A stretch of DNA of 64,000 bases. Origin: Octopus sinensis (Eukaryota). The notes below the pieces were generated by a model. That model was given only the letters and a program-made list of their open reading frames with translations. It did not search any database and had not been told where the DNA came from. Shown here piece by piece: positions 1 through 62,580 of the stretch. Both the position numbers and the translations under genes were made by a program. The DNA is taken from contig NC_043003.1 of NCBI RefSeq assembly GCF_006345805.1, forward strand, positions 20,646,001 through 20,710,000. The letters run 5' to 3'. Numbering within the stretch: the stretch's first letter is position 1; the number at the start of each line of letters is the position of its first letter.

Positions 1-464
1 CCGGTCTCAAATGTCATACAAGTGCAACACTCATCCCTCGACTCGCAATGCACTTACAACAAGGAGCTATTTCAATGCGTTATATCACACAATACAAAAC
101 AAAATCTATTTAAGAAATCATTAATAAACAATACGTCTATACTATACAGTATTCTCCATATAAATTGACGATTAATAATGGATGCAATAAAAATATGTAA
201 AACAAATTCTTTGTAAAAACAGTATATGAAACTAGAATATATATATACATATATGCGTGTGTATACACACGTATGTACTCATGTGTGTATTATGTATGCA
301 TGTATGTATGTGTGTGTGCATGCGTACGTGTGTGTGCGTGCATGCGTACGTGTACGTGTGTGCGCTCGCTCGCGTGTGTATAGAAAATGCCTGGTGACAA
401 AATCTGTAGAACAACATGTAAAATGCCTTTCGGTATTTAGTTACGGCCTATTAAGATCTGATTG

Positions 465-597
465 CAAAACCCGCCGAGGTCGACTTTGCCTTTCATCCTT
501 CAGAGGTCGATAAAATAAAGTACCAGTCATGTACTGGAGTCGATTTAATCGACTGACTCCCTTCCACCCAAGTTTCTGGCCTTGTGCCTACGTTAGA

Positions 598-629
<32 letters not shown>

Positions 630-645
630 TATTATTATTATTATA
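465..645 (+). mobile_element. SINE B 3' part with alternative tail and (ATT)n
   Basis: CGCCGAGGTCGACTTTGCCTTTCATCCTT...CTGGCCTTGTGCC + (TAT)n. Confidence 0.78.
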
Positions 646-5275: not shown

Positions 5276-5304
5276 AAAAGCGAATTACTGATAAATGCAA
5301 ATTA

Positions 5305-5525
5305 AGCCGGCGAACTAGCAGGATCGTTAGCACTCTGGACAAACAATACTTAGCAGCATTTAGTCCGAATGTACGTTCTGAGTTCAAATTCCAGCCAGGT
5401 CGACTTGGTTTTTTATCTTTTCGGGTTCGATAAAATAAGTAATAGTTAGGCGTTAGAGTCGATGTAATCGGCTTACCCACTTCCTGCGAACTTGCTGGCC
5501 TGGTAACAAAATTTGAAATCAATAA
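5305..5525 (+). mobile_element. SINE B with alternative tail
   Basis: GGCGAACTAGCAGGATCGTTAGCAC...GTTCTGAGTTCAAATTCC...GTCGATGTAATCG...CTGGCCTGGTAACAAAATTTGAAA. Confidence 0.78.
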
Positions 5526-5930
5526 TAAAGACAAATTGAAGATTACACATTTCTTTTTAATCCGCGTGTTTGTTGCTTGCTGGACGTGTTATCATGGTAT
5601 TGACAGAGCGAAAGAGAGAGACACACATACACAGACAGAGAGGAAGGGAGAATCTATGTACTACAGGAGGGAGAATCACTTCTTTTCTTTCTAGTTTTTA
5701 AGTTGGAAACTTTCCTTTTTGCATTCACCACAAGCAAATTTTCTAATCGAAAAAAATATAACAAAAACAAAAACAAAACAAGGGGCAGTAAATTTCATTA
5801 CTATTAATTGATTGGGTGTCCATTAAAATTATCTACAAAACTGAAGGCAGCGAACTGGCAGAATCGTAAGAGCACCAGGCAAAATACTTAGCAGTACCTA
5901 TGTATATATGTGTGTATAGGCACCGGTTTG

Positions 5931-34260: not shown

Positions 34261-35469
34261 ATATTTGTGAGTGTATGTGTGTGTCTTTCTATGTGCTCAA
34301 TGAAACAATTAAAGAAGATATGAAAAATAATTAAAATGATACATACAGAATCATCGTCAAATTATAGTTGATTTGGCAAAGTCCACGATCGAAAATACTA
34401 TCACAGAACTGTTACTGAAGAAATATATTTAAACAGGAAGAGTTGTTGGGAAGGATAATAAAACTGCACAACACAAATTGCACAGTAAACTAAAACTATT
34501 CAATCTGTAAAGGTTGTTCTTACTGGGTCAGTGACCGCTACATAACGGTTTGAATATACAAATTTTGGAGTCTGGAAGCAAGAATTAAGTATGATTACAC
34601 TAGGAGGACAGTCCACTAAACTCTAAAATTTTTATGAAACTGTTGTGTTATGCTTCTTCGAAAAACATACAACGTGATTAAAATGCTTCAAATACTGTCA
34701 AAATAATTCTTCGCTTAAAAATAAACGTAATCTTTTTTTTTTTCTAATTGATGCGATATGCAATAACAACTACTCTTATAGAAAAAGCTCTCTAACATAG
34801 GATAAGCATCAAAAGAAGATCTTATATGTGGATACATTACCATCTTTAAACACAACAGAATTTTCTAGAATATTCTAATGAAAATTTCCACTCAATGAAG
34901 AACAAAACGTATAAATATTATGGAAGCCAAGCAGCTATTTTCTCACTGATATGTAAACAATGTTGTAAGATTCAGGATTTTATTTATGATAAAAGAATCA
35001 TCAATAATAACAGAATTGATAACAGAATCATCGATGACTTTTCACAATGACTTTTACAGAGCTTGTGTGAGAAAAGATGGGGTCCTGAGATCAGAAACCT
35101 GGCTTGATTATATGAATTAGGGTCGTCTCCGCTAACAGCAATCAAGAGGCTAAACTGTAGAGTTAAACTAAACGATAAATTAAGCATATCCCCAGAGAAC
35201 GGGTACAGTTGATCTGCAGGTTTATTCACAGTTTACGCCTATTAAATTGAATACACAATTCGCGGGATGATTCAAAACTAGGCCACGCGTTGAGATCGAG
35301 CTCAGACCCACGTGATTGTGAAGCAGGCTTCTTAATCACACGAGCATGTTTGTGCTACGAGTTATTAAGTTACTTGGTTGTATTAGCTAAGTTTCAAATA
35401 GTAACCTTGTGAAGACAGGATTTCGAACCAAAAGGTAAATATACTTAATGAAATTTCAAGTTCTGTGAA

Positions 35470-35905
35470 TGATATTGCTTTCAAATTTTGGCACAAGGCC
35501 AGCAATTATGAGGAATTTGTTAAGTCAAATACATTGAGCCCAATGTTTAACTGGTACTTCTTATTTTATCGACTCGAAAAAAAGGCAAAGTCGACCTCGG
35601 CGCAATTTGAATTCAGAACGTAAAGATGGACGAAATGCAACAAAGGTTTTTTCCCCGGCGTAATAACGAGTCTTATTTCTTTACTGCCCACAAGGGGCTA
35701 CACTTAGAGGGGACAAACAAGGACAGACAAAGGGATTAAGTCGATTACATCGACCCCAGTGCATAACTGGTACTTAATTTATCGACCCCGAAAGGATGAA
35801 AAGCAAAGTCGACCTCGGCGGAATTTGAACTCAGAAAGTAAAGATGGACGAAATACGGCTACGCATTTCGCCCGGCATGCTAACGTTTCTGCCAGCTCGC
35901 CGCCT
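35470..35905 (-). mobile_element. Two adjacent/nested SINE B copies with different tails
   Basis: 35673-35905 has the Tx1-like tail; 35470-35672 has the GGCCTTGTGCC tail. Confidence 0.82.
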
Positions 35906-36779
35906 TTATTGTATAATTAATATTTTTGTGGATGATAATAAAAATAAATTGTACAACAATTATCCTTAAGTTTAGCATGTGACTCTACAATTTCTAACCA
36001 GAAATCTTTTCGTAATCGTTCAGCCAATCTTCCTCAGGTCACTTTCTACTGACATAAATAATGAAAAAAAGTTTATTTTTCCTGCATATCACTAAAAAGG
36101 TGAAACCGTCAAGGCTGGAATGAATTTCATCATAGATCTGCTCAATTAAAGATAAACTTGGGGTTAATCAAAACAACAACAATAACAACAACAGCTTATA
36201 TTTTTTGTAAATTTCAAGACTATAGTCATCTTTAATTGAAACTCGGTTATATCTTTATCGATGTAATTAAAAAATAAATAATAAAGTGTGCAAACTACTC
36301 CTATAGAATATTAGTCAGAAATGATATGCATAATTTTGTAAATTAATTTTGATTAAATTTCCTAATCATTATTCCGTTTTTCGTTGGTTTACGCTTTGTC
36401 TTTTGGTTTTGAAGACAGAGAAAAGAATAATATTTTGATGTTTTCATTAAAGAAGCGTGCAAAATTTTAAATTAAATTTCAATTTAAGATATAATTTTTT
36501 ATCCTCAGAAACCATTGAATAAAATAACGTCTATTGTAATATTACAGTAATGTGAAGGAGGAGGAGGTGGAGGAGGCATAAATTATGTTTCGAATTAAAC
36601 TATCGACGGATTCACATTTACGTTCCATTTCACCGGTGTCGATTGTAAGGAATACTAGTCTATCATACTTTGGAAACTAGATGCAAGAATAGCTTTACAT
36701 ACTATGTTATTATAAAATCAATACCAACTTTTTTCCTTCTGCCGATAAGTTTCTCATACCGTCATATCTTCAACAGAGA

Positions 36780-44355: not shown

Positions 44356-44814
44356 TATCATAGGTATATGTAAACATAGATCTTACTTACGTACACCCAA
44401 TACCCCACATCTAATTTTGTTTTGTATCACCCATGGACACCATATAAATACATTTTGTATAGGTGAGTTTGAATTATTCCTGCTTTATATCATTATCTTG
44501 TTGCGATTTTTTTTTACTCTTTTAATTAGTAGGTTGCCTTCAGCAGTAACTCTGTATCTTCTTATTCCCCAACCCCACCTGTAAACATTATTAAATGCGT
44601 ATTTGATGTCTAAACTCTATCTTACTACTTTCGTAGGCGTCCCTGCACTCTCAAGTTGTTTGTTCAAGATCCTACTTACATATGACACTTTATTTCTATT
44701 TATCTTGAACGATGAATACCAAAGCTATTTTTACTTCATCACATATCCTTCTGTGACGTTTAGAAAATTTCTCCCACCATCTAGCAAATATTAATCGTTT
44801 CCGTTAGCAACGGT

Positions 44815-44960
44815 TTCAAATTTTGGCGCAGGGTCAGCAGTTTTTGAGGAGAGTGGGAGTCGATTACATCGATCCCCAGTACTCGATTGGTACTTATTTG
44901 ACCGATCCCGAAAAGATGAAAGGTCAAGTCGACCACGGAAGAATTTGAACTCAGAATGTA
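44815..44960 (-). mobile_element. SINE B partial, alternative tail
   Basis: GTCGATTACATCGATCCCCAGT...GAATTTGAACTCAGAA. Confidence 0.72.
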
Positions 44961-48510: not shown

Positions 48511-48597
48511 ATTCAGAGCAGCAGAGTAGTAGTATTATAGCAGCAGTCAGTAGCGGCGCGCCAGTAGGCGCCAGTAGCGGATGCTGCGCCAGTGTGT

Positions 48598-48920
48598 AAC
48601 TGGTACTTAATTTATCGACCCCGAAAGGATGAAAGGTAAAGTCGACCTCGGCGGAATTTGAACTCAGAACGTAACGGCAGACGAAATACCTATTTCTTTA
48701 CTATCCACAAGGGGCTAAACACAGAGAGGACAAACAAGAACAGACAAACGGATAAAGTCGATTATATCGACTCCAATGCGTAACATGTACTTAATTTATC
48801 GACCCCGAAAGGATGAAAGGCAAAGTCGACCTCGGCGGAATTTGAACTCAGAACGTAGAGACAGACGAAATACCGCTAAGCATTTCGCCCGGCGTGCTAA
48901 CGTTTCTGCCAGCTCGCCGC
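48598..48920 (-). mobile_element. SINE family B tandem (2 units, Tx1-like tail)
   Basis: Head GGCGAGCTGGCAGAAACGTTAGCACGCCGGGCG at right; junction GAAATACC|TATTTCTTTAC at 48690. Confidence 0.88.
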
Positions 48921-50300: not shown

Positions 50301-50321
50301 TAGATAGACATATAGATAGAC

Positions 50322-50412
<91 letters not shown>

Positions 50413-50447
50413 GAGACAGACAGATAGACAGACAGACGGACAGACAC

Positions 50448-50506
<59 letters not shown>

Positions 50507-50511
50507 CAGAC

Positions 50512-50569
<58 letters not shown>

Positions 50570-50598
50570 GACAGACATAGATAGAAGATAGATAGATA
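50301..50598. repeat. (GATA)n/(GACA)n compound microsatellite, 3' flank of Tx1
   Basis: Direct reading of tandem GATA/GACA units. Confidence 0.97.
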
Positions 50599-50997
50599 TG
50601 TTTCTTTATTAGCCACACAGGGCTGCACACAGATAGAACAAATTACAAGGTAGAGCTTTTCTTTTGAAGGTATTAAAAAAAAAAAAAAAAAAAAAAAAAA
50701 GGAAGGGGGAGGTTCGATCAAAAGGGATCGTAAAAGGAGAGAAAGAGGACAAAAATAAGGGGGGTTAAAAAAAAAAAAAAAAAAAGGGGGGGGAGAGGAA
50801 AAAAAATGATCAATAGGGATCGTTATCACAGAAATGTCAATATGAAGTGTAAAGGGGAGGACAGGTGAGGTTTACCCGTGGAAAGAAAAGCCTGCGGAAA
50901 AGACCACGGTAACCTCGGTCAATGAAGTCACATTTTATATTTCTTTTTTTTTTTTTTTTTTTGCAAATAAGCAACTCTCTGTTTTCGATTTCTGGGT

Positions 50998-53900
50998 TCA
51001 TAGGACTATGCTCAAGGTGGCTTCGTCATTCATACGTGCCATTCTTGCTACATTCACCCATCTTTTTTTAAAACATTCGCTAGACAAAACTTGCCTCTCT
51101 ACTCTCACTTTCCTTTTCAAGTGGTACTTGAAGAAGTTGATGAGAGATTGACCAGAGAGGAAAGTGTTTGTCTCCAATCCTTTCAGACGCGTCCACCAGA
51201 TACATTCTTTCGCCATAGCCACAAGGATGATGAAAATAGCTCTTCCTTCCCGTTTGAAGGAAGGAGGCGTGACAATATTGACGATAGACTCAGCTGATAA
51301 ACCGACTCGTCCCACACGTGACAGCAGTTGTTCGACATAAGCCCACAGGTCGGAAATTGTTGGACACTGAACGAGTGCGTGCAGAACGGTTTCGTCGCTC
51401 TGACCGCATCTCGGGCAGGTCGGCCCCGTGTTTCTCGAGCCGTGTCTGTAGAGCTTATCCCGAACGGGTAGCGCTTCTCGGTAGCACTGCCAGGCAGGGA
51501 TCTCTGGAAGTTGTCCATGGGCCCTGGCCCGAAAGTCGTCCCGAACAGGCGGGTCAGGTACTCCTCGTCGACGTCCAGGTTCGCCCCGAGCTCGTCGTCG
51601 TACCTCCCCTCCACTAAACCCCTATAGAATGCTTTGGTTGTGTTGAAGTCACTTAAGGTCGACCCAGGACGGCAGAGTTGCTTGAGAGCAACGCGACACT
51701 CGCGGTGCCATTCGCCCTTCCTCGGCCTCTTTTTGATCCACGACTGCAGTTCGGTCATGGAGACGAGCTGCGGGAAAGCGTGCCTCACAAACGGCGACCA
51801 CACCTGTTCACCGTCGTCTACATAGAGCCAGAGATGTCGCAGTCTCAGCGCGTGTCTGCGCATCATCAACCACGGCATGCCCAGCCCTCCTTTTAACGGG
51901 TGTTGACAGCAAATGGATCGCCTGACCATCGGGACGCATCCTTTCCACAAGAAGCGAAAGAGGATGCGTTGTAGTTTGGTGATGGTAGGGTCGGGACAAG
52001 GTACGACGGTCAGGCGGTAGTAGATGACGGACGCGATGTACGTGTTCGCCACCTCCGCTCGACCTTTTAGGGACAGTTTCCTCTCGGCCCATTGCCGGCG
52101 AGAGTGACCACCCTACTCGTTATCTCGTTCCAGTTCTTCTCCACTTGGAGGTCCGGACCAAACCAGACCCCGAGCAACTCAACCGGGCCGTCGGTCCAGC
52201 GTCCCACGACGGAGGCGCTGGTGGACGGCATGGGCTTGCTTCTCCAGGTGCCTAGTCGCAAGCCCACTGACTTTTCCCGGTTGATTTTCGCTCCTGTCAC
52301 CGCTTCGTAGTTTTTCAGTGTCTCGCCGACCAGCTCGATGTGCTCGTGGCTAGACACTATGACGGTGACGTCGTCCGCGTATGCAGACACGCTCGTCCCG
52401 CATCCCAATTCTCGCGGGATGCCCCTTAGAGTCGCCAGCTTCCGCAGTAGTGGCTCAAGAGTCAATACGTATAGAAGCGCCGAGAGGGGGCATCCCTGAC
52501 GGACCGAACGTGCAATGTCGAAAGGTCTCGATAGATGTCCATTTACGCGAATTACCGAACGGATGCCTCTGTACAAGGCAGCTATCCAGCCGCGGAAGAC
52601 GGGACCGAAACCAGCCGCTCTCAGGACTGCCTCCAAGTATCGATGGTCTACCCTATCAAAGGCTTTTGATTGATCCAAGTTGATCAGGGCCCCACCCATG
52701 CCAGGTTCGTTAACTACCCTGTCTATGATGTAGCGCATCAGATGGAGGTTGTCATGGATGGTCCGGCCTGGCACGGCGCATGTTTGCGCCTTGTCGACCA
52801 GTTTCTCGATGACAAGCGCCAACCTCTTGGCTAGCACCTTGGCCAAAATTTTCAAGTCTGCATTAAGCAGAGTGATGGGCCTAAAGTTATCTATTACATT
52901 TCCCTTGTTTAGATCTTTCTTCAGCAGTGTTACGGCTCCTCGGCTCACAAAACCAGGAATGCTCCCGTTTTGCTGCCAGTTGCAGTACACCGCCGCCAAG
53001 AGATCTCCAAACAAGTCTGGCATACAATTGTAAAGCTCGTAGGGTAGACCATCCAAACCCGGTGATTTGTCCCTCGAGCATTCTGCCATCGCTTCCCGCA
53101 CTTCCGCCGCCGTGATGGCACCTTCGCAGCACCCTGCCTTTCTTGTCGAGAGTCGTGGTAGGCTATGTAGGTAGGCACTGAAGTCCACCCTACGTTCTTG
53201 CCCTCCACTCGTTCCGAACAGTCGGGCAAAATGCTGCTGAAAGGCCTCACACATTTTACTTGGCTCGAGCAATTCGCGCCCCTATTCATCTACCAGTGAC
53301 CGAATGGTGGCTTTGTTGCCCTGTTGCGCCTCTGCCACCCGGGCCTCTCTCGCGGCTCCAACACCTTCGTTCCTTAGAGCACGCATCCTAGCTCTGACAG
53401 CACATCCTTCGTGTTTGGCGTTGAAGTGTTGGTCGAGGGCCAACCTCGCCGCCAAAACGTCGGATGCGATGCCGCTTCTAATTGCCTCTTCTAGCTTCTT
53501 AACTAGCTCACCCTCTACTCTATTTCTATCTATGGCTAGTGCTTTGCTGTACCTAATCGCTTCTGCTTTTACTGCTCTCTTGAGGGCAAACCACCATTTG
53601 TTGTTGATGATGGCTCCCGTCAAAGCCCTCTTTACTAGTGTGCTAATCCGGTCTCTGAAAACTTGTCTCGATGGGAAAGACGCGTTTAGTTTCCAGTATC
53701 CGGGACCCTGCCTAAGTGTCTTACCTAAGTCTAGCGTACATGTCACAAGTTTGTGATCCGTGTAGCTGACTATGTGGAATTGTGGACATCCTATGCTATC
53801 TCTATCTACTGTCCTACACAGTATCCTATCTAGATACGATCTCGACGACCCGATGCGGTTGCTCCATGTCCACGTTGGCGCATTCGGGTGGTCTAGTCGA

Positions 53901-54433
53901 AACCTGTCAGACAGTTGAAAGCGTCTGAGCAGGTCTCTGAGGCATTTGCATCCCCGTCTATTCCTATCTCTACCCACGTAGTCTACATGCGTGTCCAAGG
54001 TAGCATTCCAATCCCCCACTAAGAGTAAAGGACGAGACGTTCCCAAGAAAACTTCTAGACGTTGAAAGAAATCCGCCCGACCTGTTAAGGGCGGTGCGTA
54101 AACTGATACGAGCCGAAAAGCGCACCCATTGCTGCCGTCGACATCCAGGACGACCAGTCTACCCTCCGGGTCTACGAATATTGTCCTTACATTGAGATCC
54201 AGACTCTTGTGAAAAAGTACCGCGGTGCCACTACCGCCCATTCTCGGCAGACAGGGGGAAAAATAAATGTTGAACTGTCCGCCAAACATGGTCTTTAGGG
54301 CCCGCGGATTGTGGAGTCTGGTCTCGCTTATGGCTATGATTTCTAACTTATGTGACTTTATGTCATTTAAGAGGTACCCTTGTTTCCAAGGGGACCCCAA
54401 GCCACGCGCATTTACACAACCAATCTTGATCAT
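50998..54433 (-). pseudogene. Tx1 ORF2: APE endonuclease - reverse transcriptase - zinc finger (~1145 aa if repaired)
   Basis: MIKIGCVNARGL, AISET, GDWNA, SYLDRI, SYTDHK (APE motifs); SPGLDG, NFRPITLLNADLKILAK, DQSKAFDRV, QGCPLS, YADD (RT); CPRCGQSDETVLHALVQC (C-terminal knuckle). Lesions: in-frame TAG at 53282-53284 and 1-nt deletions near 52096 and 51494. Confidence 0.93.
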
Positions 54434-54464
54434 AGTTCTAATGAATTAGAATACAGAGGGTTAC

Positions 54465-56465
54465 TTACTGCTCGAAAGTTTTTGCTTTCTCCTCCGTTGG
54501 TTTGTCCTCGAGAAGATCCCAGTACAGTTTCTTTGTGAGATATTTTTGGCATTTACCAACCGCACTGGGGAAAATGCCTTTGAGTGTGTGGTGCAGACTT
54601 TTGGAGATGTGTATTATTTTGATGTGGTCTGGTGGTGTTGTGTATGGGTGGTTGTTTGTTTTTATGTCATCTTCTGTTATGTTTGTTTTTGATTGGATGT
54701 ATTCCATCAAATTTGTGTTTTTGGTGTCTATGGCTGTGAGCATGTTTGCTGTATATGTTTTTGTGGTGTTGGTGTGGCTGTTGTTTGCGTTGGGTTTTGA
54801 AATGTCTTCGGGAGATGTATTTCCCCCTGCTTTGTTCGTGTTTGCATTTGGTTTGGTTGTGTTTTCTTTTTATTTCCTTCTTTTTGTAGCTATTTGCCAT
54901 TCCTCACTGGTTTCGTCTTCCGACGAAATTTCTGAGGAATCAGAAGGGGTAGGGTAGGGGTATGTTGTGGGCTTCTATGTATGTCTGTGTAAGTGGTTGT
55001 TGTTGTTTTCGTTGTTGTTGGTTGTTGAGTGTTGTGTGTGTTGAGTGCGGTATAAGGGATGGGGGATCAGTTTGTGTGTGTTTTCTTTGTTTTTCTGTTC
55101 CTTTGGGTTTTGCTGTTGATGGTAGTGTTGGTATTTTTCCAGGTGTCGAGTGGTTTTTGGTTGATGACGGATTAGCTTGGTGTGCTTCTCTTGTCGTCTT
55201 CTGTGTTGATGGTGGTGTGGGTAGTAGAGCTTTTTTTCCGGAGTGCTTTGGTTGTGGTAGTGGTTGTTGTTGTTGCTCTTGGTGTGCAGTGGTTGGGCAC
55301 GTCTTTTTCAAGTGTGTTTCGCTTCCACACAAATAGCAGCGTGGTCGCCTGCCCTCTACCACTATATAGAGTTTGTAGCCTCCTGGCAGTTCTATAGCGG
55401 TGGGTATCTTCTCTCTTGCTGCTTCATCCAATTGAAGCAGGAATTCGATTGATTTGCCCACATAGTCTTTCTCTCCTAGAACCGCGATTTCCAGGATGTT
55501 TGTCTCTGACATTGTCTCTGACATTTCAAAGCAGATGGCAGAGACCACCCATTGTGTTTCGACATCAAATGGTATGATTTTATTTGGACTTTCGTGACCC
55601 TTTTGTTTAAATAGACTGGTATCATTACCAAGTCGTCCGAATGTAGCTCCAATGTGGAAAAACGTTTTGCTAAACTTTCGTTGAGGAAACGTACTTGGAC
55701 TGTACCAAATTTGTTTCCCCAACTGATATATTCCTTGGAGTCCCATACAGGACGAAGGCATTTATCGATTTTTTCCTGCGGTGCATTTTCTGTTCTTCTT
55801 GTTTTTTTGTTTATTACTTTATAAATTATTGTTTTTTTTTGCGTGTTTTCCACGATGTGTTGTGGAATATGAAGGTGCAATTTGTCTCCTTCTTTGGAGA
55901 AGAGTGCCTTTGTGCGGTTTATCTCTTGTGTGGTGAATGTTACAATTGTTCTTTTTTGTTTTGTTACGTCCGCAAAATTCGTTTTGAATTTGGCAGTAGA
56001 AGTGTTAATTGTGGCAGTGTTAATTGAAGTCATGGTAGTGGTGTTGGTGTTGGCGGTATTAGCAGCAGAAGGCTTGGATGTAGCATTTGACGTCGTAGTA
56101 GTGGTGTTGGTGTTGGCGGTGTTGTCTTTGGTCGGCGGCTTTGTGCCAATTTCGTTGTTGTTGTTGTTGGTGGTGATGGTGGTGGTGCTGGCATTCATGT
56201 TTTCGTTTGTATTCATTTTTGAAATCCCTTTCTCTGTCCCTTTATCATCAACAAGTGGTGTGGGGAGTGAGGGGAAATCTAAGTTAATGTCTTTGGTCGC
56301 GGCGATGGTGAATGCGACGTTAGATTTGTTGTTGTTGTTGTTGGTGGTGGTGATGGTGGTGACAGCGGTGTTCACGCTGCGATGTTTAGCAGCTAGTGGT
56401 AGCAATAGTGTTTTGCTACCGTTCTGCATGACTGGCGGGCTAGCCACGTGGTTTCTAGTTGCCAT
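54465..56465 (-). pseudogene. Tx1 ORF1 (gag-like nucleic-acid chaperone), disrupted
   Basis: ATG at 56465; T/N-rich low-complexity N-terminus; 1-nt deletion in an A-run near 55582 moves the frame into the segment with CYLCGSETHLKKTC (C-x2-C-x4-H-x4-C); second shift near 54950 and an in-frame TAA near 54873; frame closes at 54465 just before ORF2. Confidence 0.8.
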
Positions 56466-56686
56466 TTTCAAAATGAAAAATGGCTAAAAAACCCACGAAA
56501 GTTTTGAAAGTTTTTTTGTAATTTCGCCCATACAGGGGCGGAATTCTACGTGAATAATTCTCAGGTTTTTTAGTGAATGAATTTGCACAACGATTAAAAC
56601 AAAATATTTGACAACAAGGAGTTTTAAACATGTAAAAGTGGCCAACTTACTTGGAGCCGATATGACTAGCGTCCGTCCATTGTGAT

Positions 56687-57520
<834 letters not shown>

Positions 57521-59313: not shown

Positions 59314-59730
59314 TATTTCTTTATTGCCCTCAAGGGGCTAAACATAGAGGGGACAAACAAGGACAGACAAACGGATTAAGTCGATTATATCAACCACAGT
59401 GCGTAACTAGTACTTAATTTATCGACCCCGAAAGGATGAAAGGTAAAGTCGACCTCGACGAAATTTTAACTGAGAACGTAGCGGCAGACGAAATACCTAT
59501 TTCTTTACTACCCACAAGGGGCTAAACACAGAAGGACAAATAAGGACAGACAAACGGATTAAATCGATTACATCGACTCCAGTGCATAAATAGTACTTAA
59601 TTTATAGACCCCGAAAGGATGAAAGGCATAGTCGACCTCGGCGGAATTTGAACTCAGAACGTAACGGCAGACGAAATACATCTAAGCATTTCGCTCGGCG
59701 CGCTAACGTTTCTGCCAGCTCGCTGCCTTT
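59314..59730 (-). mobile_element. SINE family B tandem (2 body units + head)
   Basis: ~180-bp units; junction at 59497. Confidence 0.88.
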
Positions 59731-61029
59731 TCTATTAATTTTTGCCGCGCCCTTTTATCATTTTCCTATTCCTGTTTTTCTGTACAAAAAGCCCTCAAAA
59801 CGTCTTTACTGTCCCTCGATGTACTGCATTGTAAATGTGTTAAGAGGGGATAAATCAAGCCAAGAGTTAGGCTAACCTCCTTTCCACTCCGAAATTTGGA
59901 ATTCAACTCCGGAATAAGTTAGTAGTTATCCGATGATATTGGGACCTCGATGTTCATACAGATCTCACTTGATAGCATATTCTTCTGGGTCAACTTTAAA
60001 CTTACCTCATAGAAGTATTGTTGCACAAAGGTGACGAGAAACTAAGATTATCCACACCAGAATCTCAAACTGTCATATTAATATTCCCAAGAGCCATGTA
60101 CTGAGGCACTAGATGTAGACAAGCGGAACATACATCCTGCAACATATCAGTTAAAAATTCTTCTCAATACTCCTTTGGGGATATATCAAAGCTACCTCTA
60201 TTCTCCGAAAAACTTTGTTCCATTTTTGTGTGTGTTTTGTTGCATAAAAGCAGTCGAGCAAGGAGGCACTAACTTTTGCACCATACATTGACCACACTTC
60301 TTTTAGTCTTTGGGCAGGGACAAGTTGAGTCATATCTTTTGACATGAAGCATTAGTAAACGATGTTGTTGTTAGTGTTGCCATTGCTGATTTAACAATTT
60401 TCTTCATTCAATTTATTGCTCATGCAGTTATGTTTTTCTTTTTCTTTTTTTCTTTTTTTTTTTTGTCTTCTGATGTGCAAATTTAAGTGTTTAAGCTTGG
60501 AACTCTACATATGTTTGATCTTATCTGCGTCAGATTTTCTTTTAATTATACTTTACCACTTGAAAAGATTTAGGTATGTATTTGATTATGTTACTGCCGC
60601 CACAATTACAACGAATGCTCTTTCCTACTACTTCTGAAGCGATCATCTTGCAACAAGTATAAGTATATTGCAAATCGTTATTATTTGTTGGAAATATATA
60701 CATCAATAAAAATATCCAAAGACAAACTTTTCTTCTACACCAGGTAAAGGGGGTAGAAAGTGAAAGCCATCCATAAGAAAGACTGAAACAAATTTATTTT
60801 TTCACAAGGAAATTGGACTAAAAATTACTTTCGTAGCAGAGCTGTCTTTCAGACGTTCATTCGTTTCAAAATACAAAAACCATTGCGACCTCAACAACAG
60901 ACATAACAACAAAAACGACAATAACAATAATGATAATAATAATGATAACAGTATCATTAGGGACTGCTAGGATACTTATGAAGGTTCTAAGCATCAAAGG
61001 TTATTTATTATAGTCTGACGGTTCAGCAC

Positions 61030-61540
61030 TTTCGAGAGAGGGAGTAAGCCGATTACATAGACCCCAGTGTTCAACTGCTACTTATTTTATCAACCTCACA
61101 AGAATTTGAACTCAAAACATAAAGACGGACGAAATACCTATTTCTTTACTACCCACAGAGAGGACAAACAAGGACAGACAGACGGATTAAGTCGATTACA
61201 TCGACCCCAGTGCGTAACTGGTACTTAATTTATCGACCCCGAAAGGATGAAAGGTAAAGTCGACCTCGGTGGAATTTGAACTCAGAACGTAGCGGCAGAC
61301 GAAATACCTATTTCTTTAATACCCAAAAGGGGCTACCCAGAAAGAGGACAAACAAGGACAGACACACGGATTAAGTCGATTACATCGATCCCAGTACATA
61401 ACTGGTACTTAATTTATCGATCCCGAAAGGATGAAAGGCAAAATCGACCTCGGCGGAATTTGAACTCAGAACTTAACAGCAGACGAAATACGGCTACGCA
61501 TTTCGCCCGGCATGCTAATGTTTCTGCCAGCTCGCCGCCT
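61030..61540 (-). mobile_element. SINE family B tandem (3 units)
   Basis: Junctions at 61138 and 61308, head at 61500-61540. Confidence 0.88.
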
Positions 61541-61680
61541 TAACAACAACAATAACAATAATAATAATGGTAATGATGATGATGATGATAATCATTTTCT
61601 TCTATACGGAGGCTAGACTATTACAACGATCCCAGTGATTAAGTAGAACTTATTTCAAGAAGAAGAAGAAGAAGAAGAAG

Positions 61681-62329
61681 CGTCACAGAAAACGAGAAAG
61701 TAACCATACTCTGGGATATGCCTATACACACAGATAGAGAAATTAAGGCCAATAGGCCAGATATAGTTGTCAGAGATCATGAAGGAAAAAAATGCTTTCT
61801 AATTGATAAATCAATACCTATTTCTTTACTACCAACAAGGGGCTAAACACAGAAGGGACAAACAAGGACAGAGAAACGGATTAAGTCGATTACTCGACCC
61901 CAGTGCGTAACTGGTACTTAATTTATCGATCCCGAAAGGATGAAAGGCAAAGTCGACCTCAGCGGAATTTGAACTCAGAACGTAGCATCAATACCAGCAG
62001 ATGACAACGTTTCTCTAAAACAAAATACAAAGACCTGGGAATAGAGGTAACTCGAATGTGGAATCTAAAAACAGAAACAATTCCTATCATAGTAGGCGCA
62101 TTAGGTATGAGAAAAGAATATTCAGACAAATACATAACAAAAACACCAGGACTAACAAATATATATAACATACAGAAAATTGCACTACTTGGCACTGCAC
62201 ACATCCTACGTAAAATACTTTCAATACAGCAACCATAAGAGCATCACAACAAACCCAAGGCACACGAAGCTGCGCTCAGTAGTGAAGTGAAAGCACGTTA
62301 TATAAATAAAACTACTGAATAATTACAAT

Positions 62330-62375
<46 letters not shown>
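61681..62375 (+). mobile_element. 5'-truncated Dong/R4-clade (RLE) non-LTR retrotransposon, interrupted by a SINE, ending in (TAA)n
   Basis: VTENEKVTILWDMPIHTDREIKANRPDIVV...CFLID.SIPADD; KYKDLGIEVTRMW...IPIIVGALG...QKIALLGTAHILR; (TAA)n at ~62330-62375. Confidence 0.87.
61819..61986 (-). mobile_element. 5'-truncated SINE B inserted in the Dong fragment
   Basis: Flanked by 9-bp direct repeat ATCAATACC (61810-61818, 61987-61995); removing it restores ...LIDKSIPADD. Confidence 0.9.
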
Positions 62376-62394
62376 GCCCTTTCTAATATAGATA

Positions 62395-62580
62395 CTAGGT
62401 CTTTAATTTTGGTAGAAGGACTAATCACTCACATTGATCCTAGTAACTAACTGGGTATATAAGTTCCGAAAGGCAAAGTCGACCTCAGCGGGATTTGGGC
62501 TCAGAACGTACAGAGCCGGTAGAAACGCTGCTAAACATTTTGTCCGGCGTGCTAACGACTCTTCCATCTCGTCGCCTTTA
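62395..62580 (-). mobile_element. SINE B diverged copy
   Basis: AAAGTCGACCTCAGCGGGATTTGGGCTCAGAACGT...CGGCGTGCTAACG. Confidence 0.7.

What the first reader, a model, noticed from the sequence alone, without database searches (positions are those of the whole stretch)
50600..50650. SINE family B ends in the same ~50 nt as the Tx1 LINE: candidate Tx1-mobilised SINE
Seen: Tx1 3' terminus on its own strand is CCTTGTAATTTGTTCTATCTGTGTGCAGCCCTGTGTGGCTAATAAAGAAAC. SINE-B 3' terminus, read across copies starting at 35673, 48691, 59314, 59498, 61309 and 61819, is CCTTGT-TTGTCCTCTCTGTGTTTAGCCCCTTGTGGG(T/C)A(G/A)TAAAGAAATA. By hand about 39 of 47 aligned positions match, with one 3-nt gap, and the match ends at the terminus of both elements. 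Neither has a poly(A) tail. Established: many SINEs borrow the 3' end of a partner LINE (L2, CR1, RTE) so that its RT recognises them, whereas mammalian L1 relies on poly(A). Inference: this high-copy tRNA-SINE is mobilised by a Tx1-clade LINE using stringent 3'-end recognition. I do not know of this pairing being described in cephalopods, but could not check.
Basis: partly seen in the sequence, partly recalled or inferred. Interest (0 to 1): 0.85.

Follow-up and report, generated by a model that had tools for sequence, protein, structure and literature searches.

The report
Octopus SINE shares LINE 3' tail
A short, abundant octopus repeat (SINE) ends in the same ~50 bases as a nearby full-length L1/Tx1-type LINE, and the same pairing recurs in the paper nautilus Argonauta, so this LINE group is very likely what copies these SINEs; this is a new example of a well-known kind of SINE-LINE partnership.

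Summary
Window 50600-50650 (minus strand) is the exact 3' end of a 6.09-kb full-length but broken LINE (56685->50600) that sits inside a (GATA)n microsatellite. Its last 50 nt align with the SINE-B consensus tail at 39 of 47 positions plus one 3-nt gap. The score is 45, against 15.2 +/- 2.4 (maximum 26) for 2000 shuffles. Both elements end at the same point and neither has poly(A).

The tail belongs to the LINE. It ends four related LINE copies from Argonauta hians and an unidentified sample, and it is about twice as conserved as the rest of the 3' UTR (69% vs 33%). Argonauta has its own SINE, with a different head, whose tail matches the Argonauta LINE tail at 33 of 35 positions (z = 18).

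Best reading: octopod L1-group LINEs recognise a specific 3' tail, and SINEs that carry that tail are copied in trans.

Caveats:
- I could show only "L1 group". I had no Tx1 reference, so the Tx1 label is untested.
- The tRNA origin of the SINE head was not confirmed.
- The small stem-loop in the tail has no covariation support.
- The window's LINE copy is a relative of the SINE's partner, not clearly the partner itself.

Novelty: a new member of a known kind. Tail sharing with L1-group LINEs is rare.

The parts
50600..50650 (-). 3'-terminal tail of the LINE (CCTTGTAATTTGTTCTATCTGTGTGCAGCCCTGTGTGGCTAATAAAGAAAC). This is the region shared with the SINE-B tail.
   Evidence: Exact single match. 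Alignment and shuffle statistics. Profile hit at E = 1e-10.
50600..56685 (-). Full-length (6.09 kb) L1-group, Tx1-like non-LTR retrotransposon. It is inactivated by at least four lesions.
   Evidence: ORF map. Pfam Exo_endo_phos, RVT_1 and zf-RVT. The 5' junction with (TATC)n lies at about 56686.
50600..51000 (-). LINE 3' UTR of about 400 nt, with long T/C-rich tracts and the conserved tail at its end.
   Evidence: The ORF2 C-terminus ...NDEATLSIVL* ends at about 51001 and aligns with the C-termini of relatives. UTR alignment.
51001..54445 (-). ORF2, broken. APE domain 54445-53285; in-frame stop 53284-53282; RT 53281-52070; frameshift; 52112-51186; frameshift; 51621-51001 carrying zf-RVT.
   Evidence: Human L1 ORF2p is the best solved-structure match (E = 4e-33).
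54943..56466 (-). ORF1, frameshifted (56466-55479 and 55761-54943). It has one CCHC zinc knuckle (CYLCGSETHLKKTC, about 55294-55341) and no L1-type Transposase_22 domain.
   Evidence: The knuckle is only weakly detected: Pfam zf-CCHC E = 0.14, TUT7 knuckle E = 0.005.
50301..50598 (.). (GATA)n/(GACA)n microsatellite flanking the LINE 3' end.
   Evidence: and direct reading.
56687..57520 (.). (GATA)n microsatellite flanking the LINE 5' end, in the same orientation as the 3' flank. The LINE therefore splits one array.
35674..35906 (-). SINE-B full-length copy. Its tail is at 35674-35722.
48691..48920 (-). SINE-B full-length copy. It is followed directly by a partial unit at 48589-48690.
48589..48690 (-). 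5'-truncated SINE-B unit (consensus positions 49 to about 150), joined to the tail of the upstream copy.
59498..59729 (-). SINE-B full-length copy, the upstream unit of a two-unit array.
59314..59497 (-). SINE-B unit that starts at consensus position 49 and carries its own tail. It is the downstream unit of the array.
61309..61542 (-). SINE-B full-length copy, the first unit of a three-unit array.
61139..61308 (-). SINE-B unit from consensus position 49, with a 14-nt deletion inside the tail. It is followed by an older unit of another SINE family (about 60990-61138).
61819..61986 (-). Solo 5'-truncated SINE-B copy with a 9-bp target-site duplication (61810-61818 and 61987-61995), inserted in another retroelement.

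Best explanation
Window 50600-50650 is the 3' terminus of an L1-group (Tx1-like) LINE. Its last 35-50 nt form a conserved module of the form CTGTGT-N2-4-GSCC(C)-CTTGT-GGSY-AATAAAGAAAT(A/C). SINE-B carries the same module as its last ~50 nt. SINE-B is a ~232-nt pol III-type SINE with a CORE-like body.

The most likely mechanism is the classic 'stringent' SINE/LINE partnership. The ORF2 protein of this LINE group (endonuclease plus reverse transcriptase) binds the 3' tail of its own RNA and starts target-primed reverse transcription at the end of ...GAAAT(A/C), without needing poly(A). SINE RNAs that present the same tail are copied in trans.

Shown here:
- the shared, co-terminal tail;
- its ownership by the LINE lineage;
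- its recurrence as a matching LINE/SINE pair in a second octopod genus;
- the absence of poly(A);
- target-site duplications of 9-13 bp.

Inferred, not shown:
- that the ORF2 protein recognises the tail;
- that a small stem-loop (a 4-bp GGCC/GGCU-type stem with a CUUGU loop) is the determinant;
- that the partner of SINE-B is a sister family of the copy seen in this window.
For: 1. Tail identity is 39/47 and co-terminal, with z = 12.7 against 2000 shuffles. It is the only non-SINE match in the window.

2. The tail ends four other copies of related LINEs: L001 (end 2019), L002 (ends 7284 and 7650, the latter a 5'-truncated copy that is 3' UTR only) and L004 (end 4191). These elements are 70-82% identical to the window LINE in DNA.

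3. Among these five UTRs the last 37 columns are 69% identical pairwise, against 32-34% upstream.

4. L061 is 82% identical to the window LINE. Its homology continues through the 3' UTR into the first bases of the tail region before the contig ends. The tail is therefore not a SINE fragment pasted onto this one copy.

5. Argonauta hians has a SINE with a different head but a homologous body. Its tail, TTCTGTGTTCGGCCCTTGTGGCTAATAGAGAAATC, matches the Argonauta LINE tail at 33/35 positions, and the similarity extends over about 70 nt (score 63 against 16.4 +/- 2.6, z = 18).

6. Other SINEs in the window have the same head and body but a different tail (..GCTGGCCTTGTGCCAAAATTTGAAA..). The tail is therefore an exchangeable module.

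7. There are clean TSDs: 9 bp in the window, and 12-13 bp in Argonauta. Seven of 12 Argonauta tails, LINE and SINE alike, are followed by TAT.

8. A paper on O. vulgaris (PMC13282606) reports 13 recently active L1-Tx1 families and a joint SINE+LINE burst at JC distance 0.065. The SINE-B units here are 1-7% from their consensus.
Against: - No functional test was done.
- The stem-loop is tiny. Single-sequence folding z-scores range from +0.04 to -2.7. On 7 sequences, 82% of cells pair (about 50% in the slid controls), but covariation is no better than in shuffles.
- The window's LINE tail is only 27/36 identical to the SINE-B tail over the last 36 nt. That is no closer than an Argonauta LINE (30/37), so the true partner family was not seen.
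- LINE clades absent from the window (RTE, CR1, Dong-R4) could not be screened for the same tail.
- The Tx1 label is untested.
- Only 7 SINE-B units and 5 LINE tails were available.
Confidence: 0.72

Rival explanations
1. Reverse direction or local artefact. The last ~50 nt of the window's LINE would be a SINE-B-derived fragment, either a short 5'-truncated SINE insertion or a template-switch chimera at the LINE's end. It would then not be a native LINE tail.
For: The LINE/SINE similarity starts abruptly at CCTTG and covers only ~50 nt. Head-to-tail SINE arrays in the window show that chimeric or tandem junctions do form here.
Against: The same tail terminates four related LINE copies from other sources, including a copy that is 3' UTR only. 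It is the best-conserved part of the UTR. L061 shows LINE-to-LINE homology running into the tail region. The LINE tail keeps AATAAA, whereas the SINE has AGTAAA.
Confidence: 0.05
2. The tail is shared by descent, but a different autonomous element moves the SINE. That element would be another LINE clade that carries, or tolerates, the same tail. The L1-group LINE would then be a bystander or a former partner.
For: The window LINE's tail is only about 75% identical to SINE-B's. Octopus genomes hold active RTE, CR1 and Dong-R4 LINEs (PMC13282606; PMC9115989). None of these could be screened here.
Against: Every LINE found with the tail belongs to the same APE-RT-zf-RVT group. The LINE and SINE tails track each other within a genus: CGGCCC..GGCT in both Argonauta elements, AGCCC in both window elements. 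No other LINE-like 3' end in the window matches.
Confidence: 0.12
3. The tail is a fossil. SINE-B acquired it from this LINE group, but mobilisation does not depend on specific tail recognition. For example, initiation could rely on short terminal microhomology with AT-rich target sites, as in relaxed L1-type priming.
For: The L1 group is generally of the 'relaxed' type (PMC3472496, PMC3747384). There is no covariation support for the stem-loop. The junctions show a TAT preference that could reflect primer-template annealing.
Against: The tail is twice as conserved as the rest of the LINE UTR across lineages that have diverged to 70-82%. SINEs with unrelated heads retain it in two genera. Neither element has the poly(A) that relaxed priming uses.
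Confidence: 0.1
4. The resemblance is a chance or low-complexity match.
For: Both tails are T/G-rich with an A-rich end.
Against: None of 2000 dinucleotide shuffles reached even 60% of the observed score. An independent replicate in Argonauta gives z = 18.
Confidence: 0.01

Closest known systems
Stringent-type SINE/LINE pairs with a common 3' tail, e.g. eel UnaSINE1/UnaL2, tortoise Pol III SINE/CR1, tobacco TS/RTE (Ohshima et al. 1996; Kajikawa & Okada 2002; reviewed in PMC3747384)
   Same: The SINE's last ~50 nt match the LINE's last ~50 nt and are co-terminal. Neither element has poly(A). The conserved tail contains a potential small stem-loop. SINE families sharing one body carry different tails, so the tail is modular.
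   Different: The known pairs are overwhelmingly L2, CR1 and RTE. Here the LINE is an L1-group element (APE-RT-zf-RVT, with a CCHC ORF1). No assay has been done. No terminal short tandem repeat is evident on the window copies, although relatives L001 and L004 end in (ATT)n.
L1-clade LINEs with SINE partners that share a tail: maize/sorghum SINEs with a monocot L1 lineage, and Chlamydomonas SINEX-3_CR/L1-1_CR (Ohshima 2012, PMC3472496)
   Same: An L1-group LINE whose conserved 3' end, with stem-loop potential, is shared by a SINE. This argues for specific rather than poly(A)-based recognition within the L1 group.
   Different: Those three cases are in plants and a green alga, and at least the algal pair ends in poly(A). 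The present pair is in animals (octopods) and lacks poly(A). According to that survey only 3 of 58 known pairs involved L1-clade tails.
SINEU mobilised by Tx1-Mar LINEs in crocodilians (Kojima 2015, PMC4494074)
   Same: A proposed partnership between SINEs and Tx1-type LINEs of the L1 group. Insertion-site behaviour is shared between SINE and LINE.
   Different: That link rests on a shared target (Mariner-N4_AMi) and shared snRNA-derived 5' heads, not on a shared 3' tail. Here the link is a shared 3' tail, and target specificity is only hinted at.
Microsatellite-specific Tx1-clade LINEs: Kibi (TC)n, Koshi (TTC)n, and crocodilian Tx1 in (TTCC)n/(TTTC)n (Kojima & Fujiwara 2004; PMC4494074)
   Same: The window LINE sits inside a single (GATA)n array that reads (TATC)n on the LINE strand on both flanks. 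Relatives L001 and L004 are followed by (ATT)n.
   Different: There is only one fully flanked example here. (GATA)n makes up about 2.4% of the non-LINE window, so chance is about 1 in 40. The SINE-B copies are not in microsatellites.

Membership tests
SINE/LINE pair with a common 3' tail (stringent type) | The 3'-terminal sequence of the SINE is similar to the 3'-terminal sequence of the LINE, co-linear to the very end, and beyond chance. | tested here: met
   39/47 identities plus one gap, z = 12.7. Argonauta replicate: 33/35, z = 18.
SINE/LINE pair with a common 3' tail (stringent type) | The tail is a genuine, conserved feature of the LINE family, not of a single copy. | tested here: met
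   Five LINE termini from at least three sources. The tail is 69% identical pairwise against 33% for the rest of the UTR. A 5'-truncated LINE copy also ends with it.
SINE/LINE pair with a common 3' tail (stringent type) | A conserved RNA stem-loop in the tail, supported by compensatory changes. | tested here: inconclusive
   A 4-bp stem with a CUUGU loop is present in all 7 sequences, and one GC-to-CG pair change is seen. Covariation does not exceed shuffles, and folding z-scores are weak.
SINE/LINE pair with a common 3' tail (stringent type) | The tail is required for trans-mobilisation by the LINE's ORF2 protein. | not testable with these tools
   Needs a retrotransposition assay.
SINE/LINE pair with a common 3' tail (stringent type) | Overlapping periods of activity for the SINE and the LINE. 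| tested here: inconclusive
   SINE-B units are 1-7% from a 7-copy consensus. The LINE copy has about 4 lesions, but no family consensus was available. The literature reports a joint SINE+LINE burst in O. vulgaris.
L1 group of non-LTR retrotransposons (L1 + Tx1) | ORF2 with an N-terminal APE endonuclease, a reverse transcriptase and a C-terminal Cys-rich domain, and no RNase H. | tested here: met
   Exo_endo_phos E = 3.5e-16, RVT_1 E = 1.5e-31, zf-RVT E = 6e-8. Human L1 ORF2p is the top solved-structure hit, ahead of R2. Distant named relatives are vertebrate and plant L1 elements.
Tx1 clade | The RT domain groups with Tx1 references (Xenopus Tx1L, Keno, Kibi, Koshi) rather than with L1 proper in a phylogeny. 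| not testable with these tools
   No Tx1 reference sequence was obtainable, and source names of relatives were uninformative. Published RepeatMasker-based annotations list 'L1-Tx1' as the L1-group LINEs of Octopus.
Tx1 clade | Target-sequence-specific insertion (multicopy genes, transposons or microsatellites). | tested here: inconclusive
   The window copy splits one (GATA)n array, at prior odds of about 2%. L001 and L004 are followed by (ATT)n. n is too small.
Tx1 clade | ORF1 has a CCHC zinc knuckle rather than the Transposase_22-type domains of vertebrate L1, and the element has no poly(A) tail. | tested here: met
   A CX2CX4HX4C motif is present and weakly detected. There is no Transposase_22 hit. 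The element ends ...AAAGAAAC followed by (TATC)n. That Tx1 ORF1 carries CCHC knuckles is from my own knowledge, not from a tool.
tRNA-derived CORE-SINE | A 5' head recognisable as a tRNA, with internal A and B boxes. | tested here: inconclusive
   Rfam at E <= 1 and ARAGORN find no tRNA in the copies. By eye there is a B-box-like GAGTTCAAATTCC and an A-box-like TGGCAGAAAC about 55 nt apart.
tRNA-derived CORE-SINE | A central CORE domain. | not tested
   The resemblance of ...TTTCATCCTTTCGGGGTCGATAAATTAAGTACCAG... to the MIR/CORE segment is from memory only. Published annotation says octopus SINEs are mainly tRNA-Core and tRNA-Deu.

The most novel reading that the evidence does not exclude
Octopod L1/Tx1-type LINEs would be stringent-type elements whose conserved 3' stem-loop tail has been captured repeatedly by SINEs with different heads. 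This LINE group, rather than the RTE element highlighted so far, would be the engine of the octopus-specific SINE expansion (about 11% of the genome). In addition, the same machinery would build head-to-tail SINE arrays. It would do so either by re-using the 3' end of a resident copy as a landing site or by switching templates at a fixed point (consensus position 49). That would explain the invariant AAAGAAATA|GGTATTTCGTC junctions.
Probability: 0.3. Interest if true: 0.7.

Novelty: new member of a known kind. Interest (0 to 1): 0.5.

Why it matters
SINEs are the largest repeat class in Octopus genomes and are over-represented in brain transcripts. None of the papers I could search names the autonomous element that copies them. 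A shared 3' tail with L1/Tx1-type LINEs points to a concrete, testable driver.

The finding also bears on a general question. The L1 group is the textbook 'relaxed', poly(A)-dependent lineage, and only three tail-sharing SINE pairs were known for it in a 2012 survey, all in plants or algae. An animal L1-group lineage with a conserved, poly(A)-less tail shared by SINEs in two genera would support the view that specific 3' recognition is ancestral in this group and was relaxed later.

In practice, the tail motif gives a simple handle for classifying the many 'unclassified' octopus SINE families.

Tried and rejected
1. Two scans of metagenome contigs for the tail motif gave nothing, then 52 hits. 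None of the 52 contained SINE-like sequence, so they are chance matches.

2. Naming the LINE clade from source annotations failed. Two cluster look-ups, the representative search and a third homologue search seeded with a Patella relative returned no Tx1- or L1-labelled close relatives. Only distant dog, lizard and plant L1-type proteins were named, so I can support 'L1 group' only.

3. Rfam and ARAGORN did not recognise a tRNA in the SINE head.

4. A Pfam scan of 10 other long ORFs in the window found no further LINE domains. A second batch failed on a bad coordinate and I did not repeat it. The window-wide tail searches served as the check instead.

5. TSDs of the SINE arrays could not be defined with my approximate ends.

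6. A full-text search for four diagnostic sequence strings found no paper. The Albertin 2015 paper and the supplements of Ohshima 2012 and Kojima 2015 are not held.

7. L061, the closest relative of the window LINE, ends about 15 nt into the tail region, so it gives no second full tail.

8. L057 and L058 carry only loosely similar ends (..GGGCCTTGTGACC....CCTCTTGTGGCCAAT..). I did not count them as tails.

Rejected readings: a chance match, and a SINE fragment pasted onto this one LINE copy (see rivals).

Full report
**What is at the coordinates.** It is the 3' terminus of a non-LTR retrotransposon running from about 56685 down to 50600 (6.09 kb).

On its own strand the element has these parts:
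- ORF1: 56466-55479 and 55761-54943, with one frameshift. It carries a CX2CX4HX4C zinc knuckle and has no L1-type Transposase_22 domain.
- ORF2, endonuclease: an apurinic/apyrimidinic-type endonuclease at 54445-53285 (Pfam Exo_endo_phos, E = 3.5e-16).
- An in-frame stop at 53284-53282.
- ORF2, reverse transcriptase: 53281-52070 (RVT_1, E = 1.5e-31).
- ORF2, C-terminal part: two further frameshifts, ending at about 51001 and containing zf-RVT (E = 6e-8).
- A ~400-nt 3' UTR, which ends ...GGCTAATAAAGAAAC and is followed at once by (TATC)n.

The 5' end abuts the same repeat in the same orientation: (GATA)n at 56687-57520 and 50301-50598. The LINE therefore splits one microsatellite. (GATA)n arrays make up about 2.4% of the rest of the window, so this placement hints at target preference but does not prove it.

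**Which LINE group.** The RT's best solved-structure match is human L1 ORF2p (E = 4e-33), well ahead of R2 (about 1e-20). Close relatives are cephalopod proteins (Argonauta hians 69%, Acanthosepion pharaonis 52%), and those with a C-terminus carry zf-RVT. More distant named relatives are vertebrate and plant L1-type proteins. This places the element in the L1 group.

I could not obtain any Tx1 reference, and source names were uninformative. 'Tx1 clade' therefore remains plausible but untested. In its favour: there is no poly(A), ORF1 has a CCHC knuckle, the element sits in a microsatellite, and published annotations call the L1-group LINEs of Octopus 'L1-Tx1'.

**The SINE.** BLAST with one copy finds SINE-B units whose 3' ends lie at 35674, 48691, 59314, 59498, 61139, 61309 and 61819, all on the minus strand.

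A solo, 5'-truncated copy (61819-61986) has a clean 9-bp target-site duplication (61810-61818 and 61987-61995). This fixes the SINE terminus at ...GTAAAGAAATA, with no poly(A).

Rfam and ARAGORN do not recognise a tRNA in the head. Only B-box-like and A-box-like motifs are visible by eye. 'tRNA-derived' is therefore unconfirmed here, although published annotation describes octopus SINEs as mainly tRNA-Core and tRNA-Deu.

**Is the match more than chance?** A local alignment of the LINE's last 121 nt with the SINE consensus gives 39 identities over 47 aligned positions plus one 3-nt gap, and it runs to the end of both elements. The score is 45. For 2000 dinucleotide-preserving shuffles of the LINE tail the mean is 15.2, sd 2.35 and maximum 26 (z = 12.7). 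The reciprocal test against the whole 3' UTR gives z = 12.4. Sensitive searches of the window with the SINE tail, and with a profile of seven tails, find only the seven SINE-B tails and the LINE end.

**Whose tail is it?** I fetched related LINE copies through their proteins.
- L001, from an unidentified JGI sample, ends ...GGGCCCTTGTGGCCAATAAAAGAAATC followed by (ATT)n.
- L002, from Argonauta hians, has one copy ending ...CTGTGTCAGCCAGGTGGCTAAGAAAGAAATT. It has a second, 5'-truncated copy consisting of 3' UTR only, which ends ...CTGTGTCGGCCCTTGTGGCTAATAAAGAAATC.
- L004, also from Argonauta, ends ...CTCTATGTTTTTGCCCTTGTGGCTAATAAAAGAAATA followed by (ATT)4.

These elements are only 70-82% identical to the window LINE in DNA. 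Even so, across the five 3' UTRs the last 37 alignment columns are 69% identical pairwise, against 32-34% for everything upstream.

L061 is the closest relative of the window LINE (82%). Its homology runs through the UTR into the first bases of the tail region before the contig stops.

The tail is therefore an ancestral, constrained feature of this LINE lineage, not a SINE fragment attached to one copy.

**Independent replicate.** The 19 kb of Argonauta sequence holds about a dozen tails. Most belong to a SINE with a different head but a homologous body.

The consensus tail of that SINE is TTCTGTGTTCGGCCCTTGTGGCTAATAGAGAAATC. The Argonauta LINE tail is TTCTGTGTCGGCCCTTGTGGCTAATAAAGAAATC. They agree at 33 of 35 positions, with similarity over about 70 nt (score 63 against 16.4 +/- 2.6 for shuffles, z = 18).

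The SINE and LINE tails also track each other within a genus. Both Argonauta elements have CGGCCC...GGCT, and both window elements have AGCCC.

Argonauta SINE copies have 12-13-bp TSDs. Seven of 12 Argonauta tails, LINE and SINE alike, are followed by TAT, which suggests one endonuclease.

**Modularity.** Other SINEs in the window share the head and body of SINE-B but end ...GCTGGCCTTGTGCCAAAATTTGAAA..., or in (ATT)n. The tail is therefore an exchangeable module. This second tail also has a GGCC-TTGT-GCC motif and may come from another lineage of the same LINE group. I did not show that.

**Structure.** All seven tails compared can form a 4-bp stem (GGCC/GGCU; GCCC/GGGU in SINE-B) closing a CUUGU-type loop. 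Some can extend it to about 11 bp (UUCU.UGU.GGCC...GGCU.AUA.AGAA). On the alignment, 82% of cells pair, against about 50% when partners are slid. There is one GC-to-CG change. Covariation does not exceed shuffles, and single-sequence z-scores run from +0.04 to -2.7. The stem-loop is a reasonable candidate recognition element, but it is not demonstrated.

**Which LINE is the partner?** Over the last 36 nt the SINE-B tail is 27/36 identical to the window's LINE, but 30/37 to the Argonauta L004 LINE. The copy in the window is thus a member of the right group but probably not of the family that drove SINE-B. O. vulgaris is reported to have 13 recently active L1-Tx1 families.

**Mechanism proposed.** The ORF2 protein of these LINEs binds the conserved 3' module of its RNA. 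The LINE version contains AATAAA, so pol II transcripts probably extend past the element end, and initiation must then be internal and specific. The protein nicks AT-rich targets and primes reverse transcription at ...GAAAT(A/C). SINE RNAs that carry the module are copied in trans.

The sequence facts above are shown. Protein-RNA recognition, the role of the stem-loop and the identity of the partner family are inferred.

**Comparison with what is known.** SINE/LINE tail sharing is classical for L2, CR1 and RTE. For the L1 clade, a 2012 survey found only three tail-sharing SINEs among 58 pairs, all in plants or a green alga. Tx1-type LINEs have been proposed to mobilise crocodilian SINEU elements, but on the basis of shared targets and heads rather than tails.

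I found no paper that describes an octopus SINE with an L1/Tx1 tail. Repbase, Dfam and SINEBase could not be consulted, so the pairing may already be recorded there.

I rate this a new member of a known kind. Interest is moderate, because it names a likely driver of the octopus SINE expansion and adds an animal case of specific 3' recognition in the L1 group.

**Unexplained: the SINE arrays.** Every full-length SINE-B copy in the window is followed by a SINE unit that begins at consensus position 49.
- In four cases the junction is the identical AAAGAAATA|GGTATTTCGTC.
- The fifth case, at 35674, has a spacer of about 35 nt.
- No SINE head lies upstream of the full copies, so this is not nested insertion.
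- Three downstream units share a diagnostic base (GACTTTACC), which fits an amplified dimer.
- Against that, one of the four identical junctions (61139/61138) and the spacer case lead into another SINE family. In two of three arrays the downstream unit is much closer to the consensus than its upstream partner (2.0% vs 5.4%; 1.2% vs 7.1%).

Template switching at a fixed point, an amplified composite, and re-use of a resident tail as a landing site all remain open.

Noticed in passing
window 48589-48920, 59314-59729, 60990-61542, 35400-35906 (minus strand): Every full-length SINE-B copy is followed head-to-tail by a SINE unit that begins at consensus position 49. The junction AAAGAAATA|GGTATTTCGTC is identical in four cases, and there is no SINE head upstream of the full copies. 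Some downstream units belong to another SINE family, and upstream and downstream units differ in divergence. An amplified dimer, RT template switching and re-use of the tail as a landing site are all still possible.
   Followed up: partly
window 50301-50598 and 56687-57520: The 6.09-kb LINE splits a single (GATA)n/(GACA)n microsatellite of about 1.1 kb, in the same orientation on both flanks. Such arrays are about 2.4% of the rest of the window. This hints at microsatellite targeting, as in the Tx1-clade elements Kibi and Koshi, but it is a single case.
   Followed up: partly
window 421-640(+), 5302-5530(+), 35400-35636(-), 44730-44956(-), 62270-62578(-): A second SINE family has the same head and body as SINE-B but a different tail (..GCTGGCCTTGTGCCAAAATTTGAAA..). 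Two of the copies end in (ATT)n. LINE relatives L001 and L004 also end in AAAGAAAT(C/A)+(ATT)n, so (ATT)n arrays may be retroelement termini.
   Followed up: partly
L002 8620-10310 and L004 4827-5850 (Argonauta hians): Argonauta has a high-density SINE (about 9 copies in 19 kb) with a different head, the same CORE-like body and the LINE tail. Its TSDs are 12-13 bp, and 7 of 12 tail junctions are followed by TAT.
   Followed up: yes
window 61660-62300 (+): This is a fragment of another retroelement whose translation includes ...NRPDIVVRDHEGKKCFLID.... It is the host of the solo SINE-B insertion with the 9-bp TSD. I did not classify it.
   Followed up: no
window 50660-50960 (LINE 3' UTR): The UTR contains unusually long homopolymer tracts: T22-26, C8 and T19 on the LINE strand. 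Relatives instead share a CCCCCCTATTGGGGATTTCT motif in the UTR.
   Followed up: no
proteins P0123 and P0143: A fragment of this cephalopod LINE family is deposited as a protein of a 'Herbaspirillum sp.' MAG, which is probably host contamination. In Patella caerulea, 11 near-identical copies of a related LINE ORF2 are annotated at neighbouring locus tags on one contig, which suggests insertion into a tandemly repeated target.
   Followed up: no
window-wide: The window is very rich in microsatellites, with (TA)n, (TG)n, (GATA)n, (ATAC)n, (GAA)n and (TTC)n arrays of 100-800 bp every few kb.
   Followed up: no
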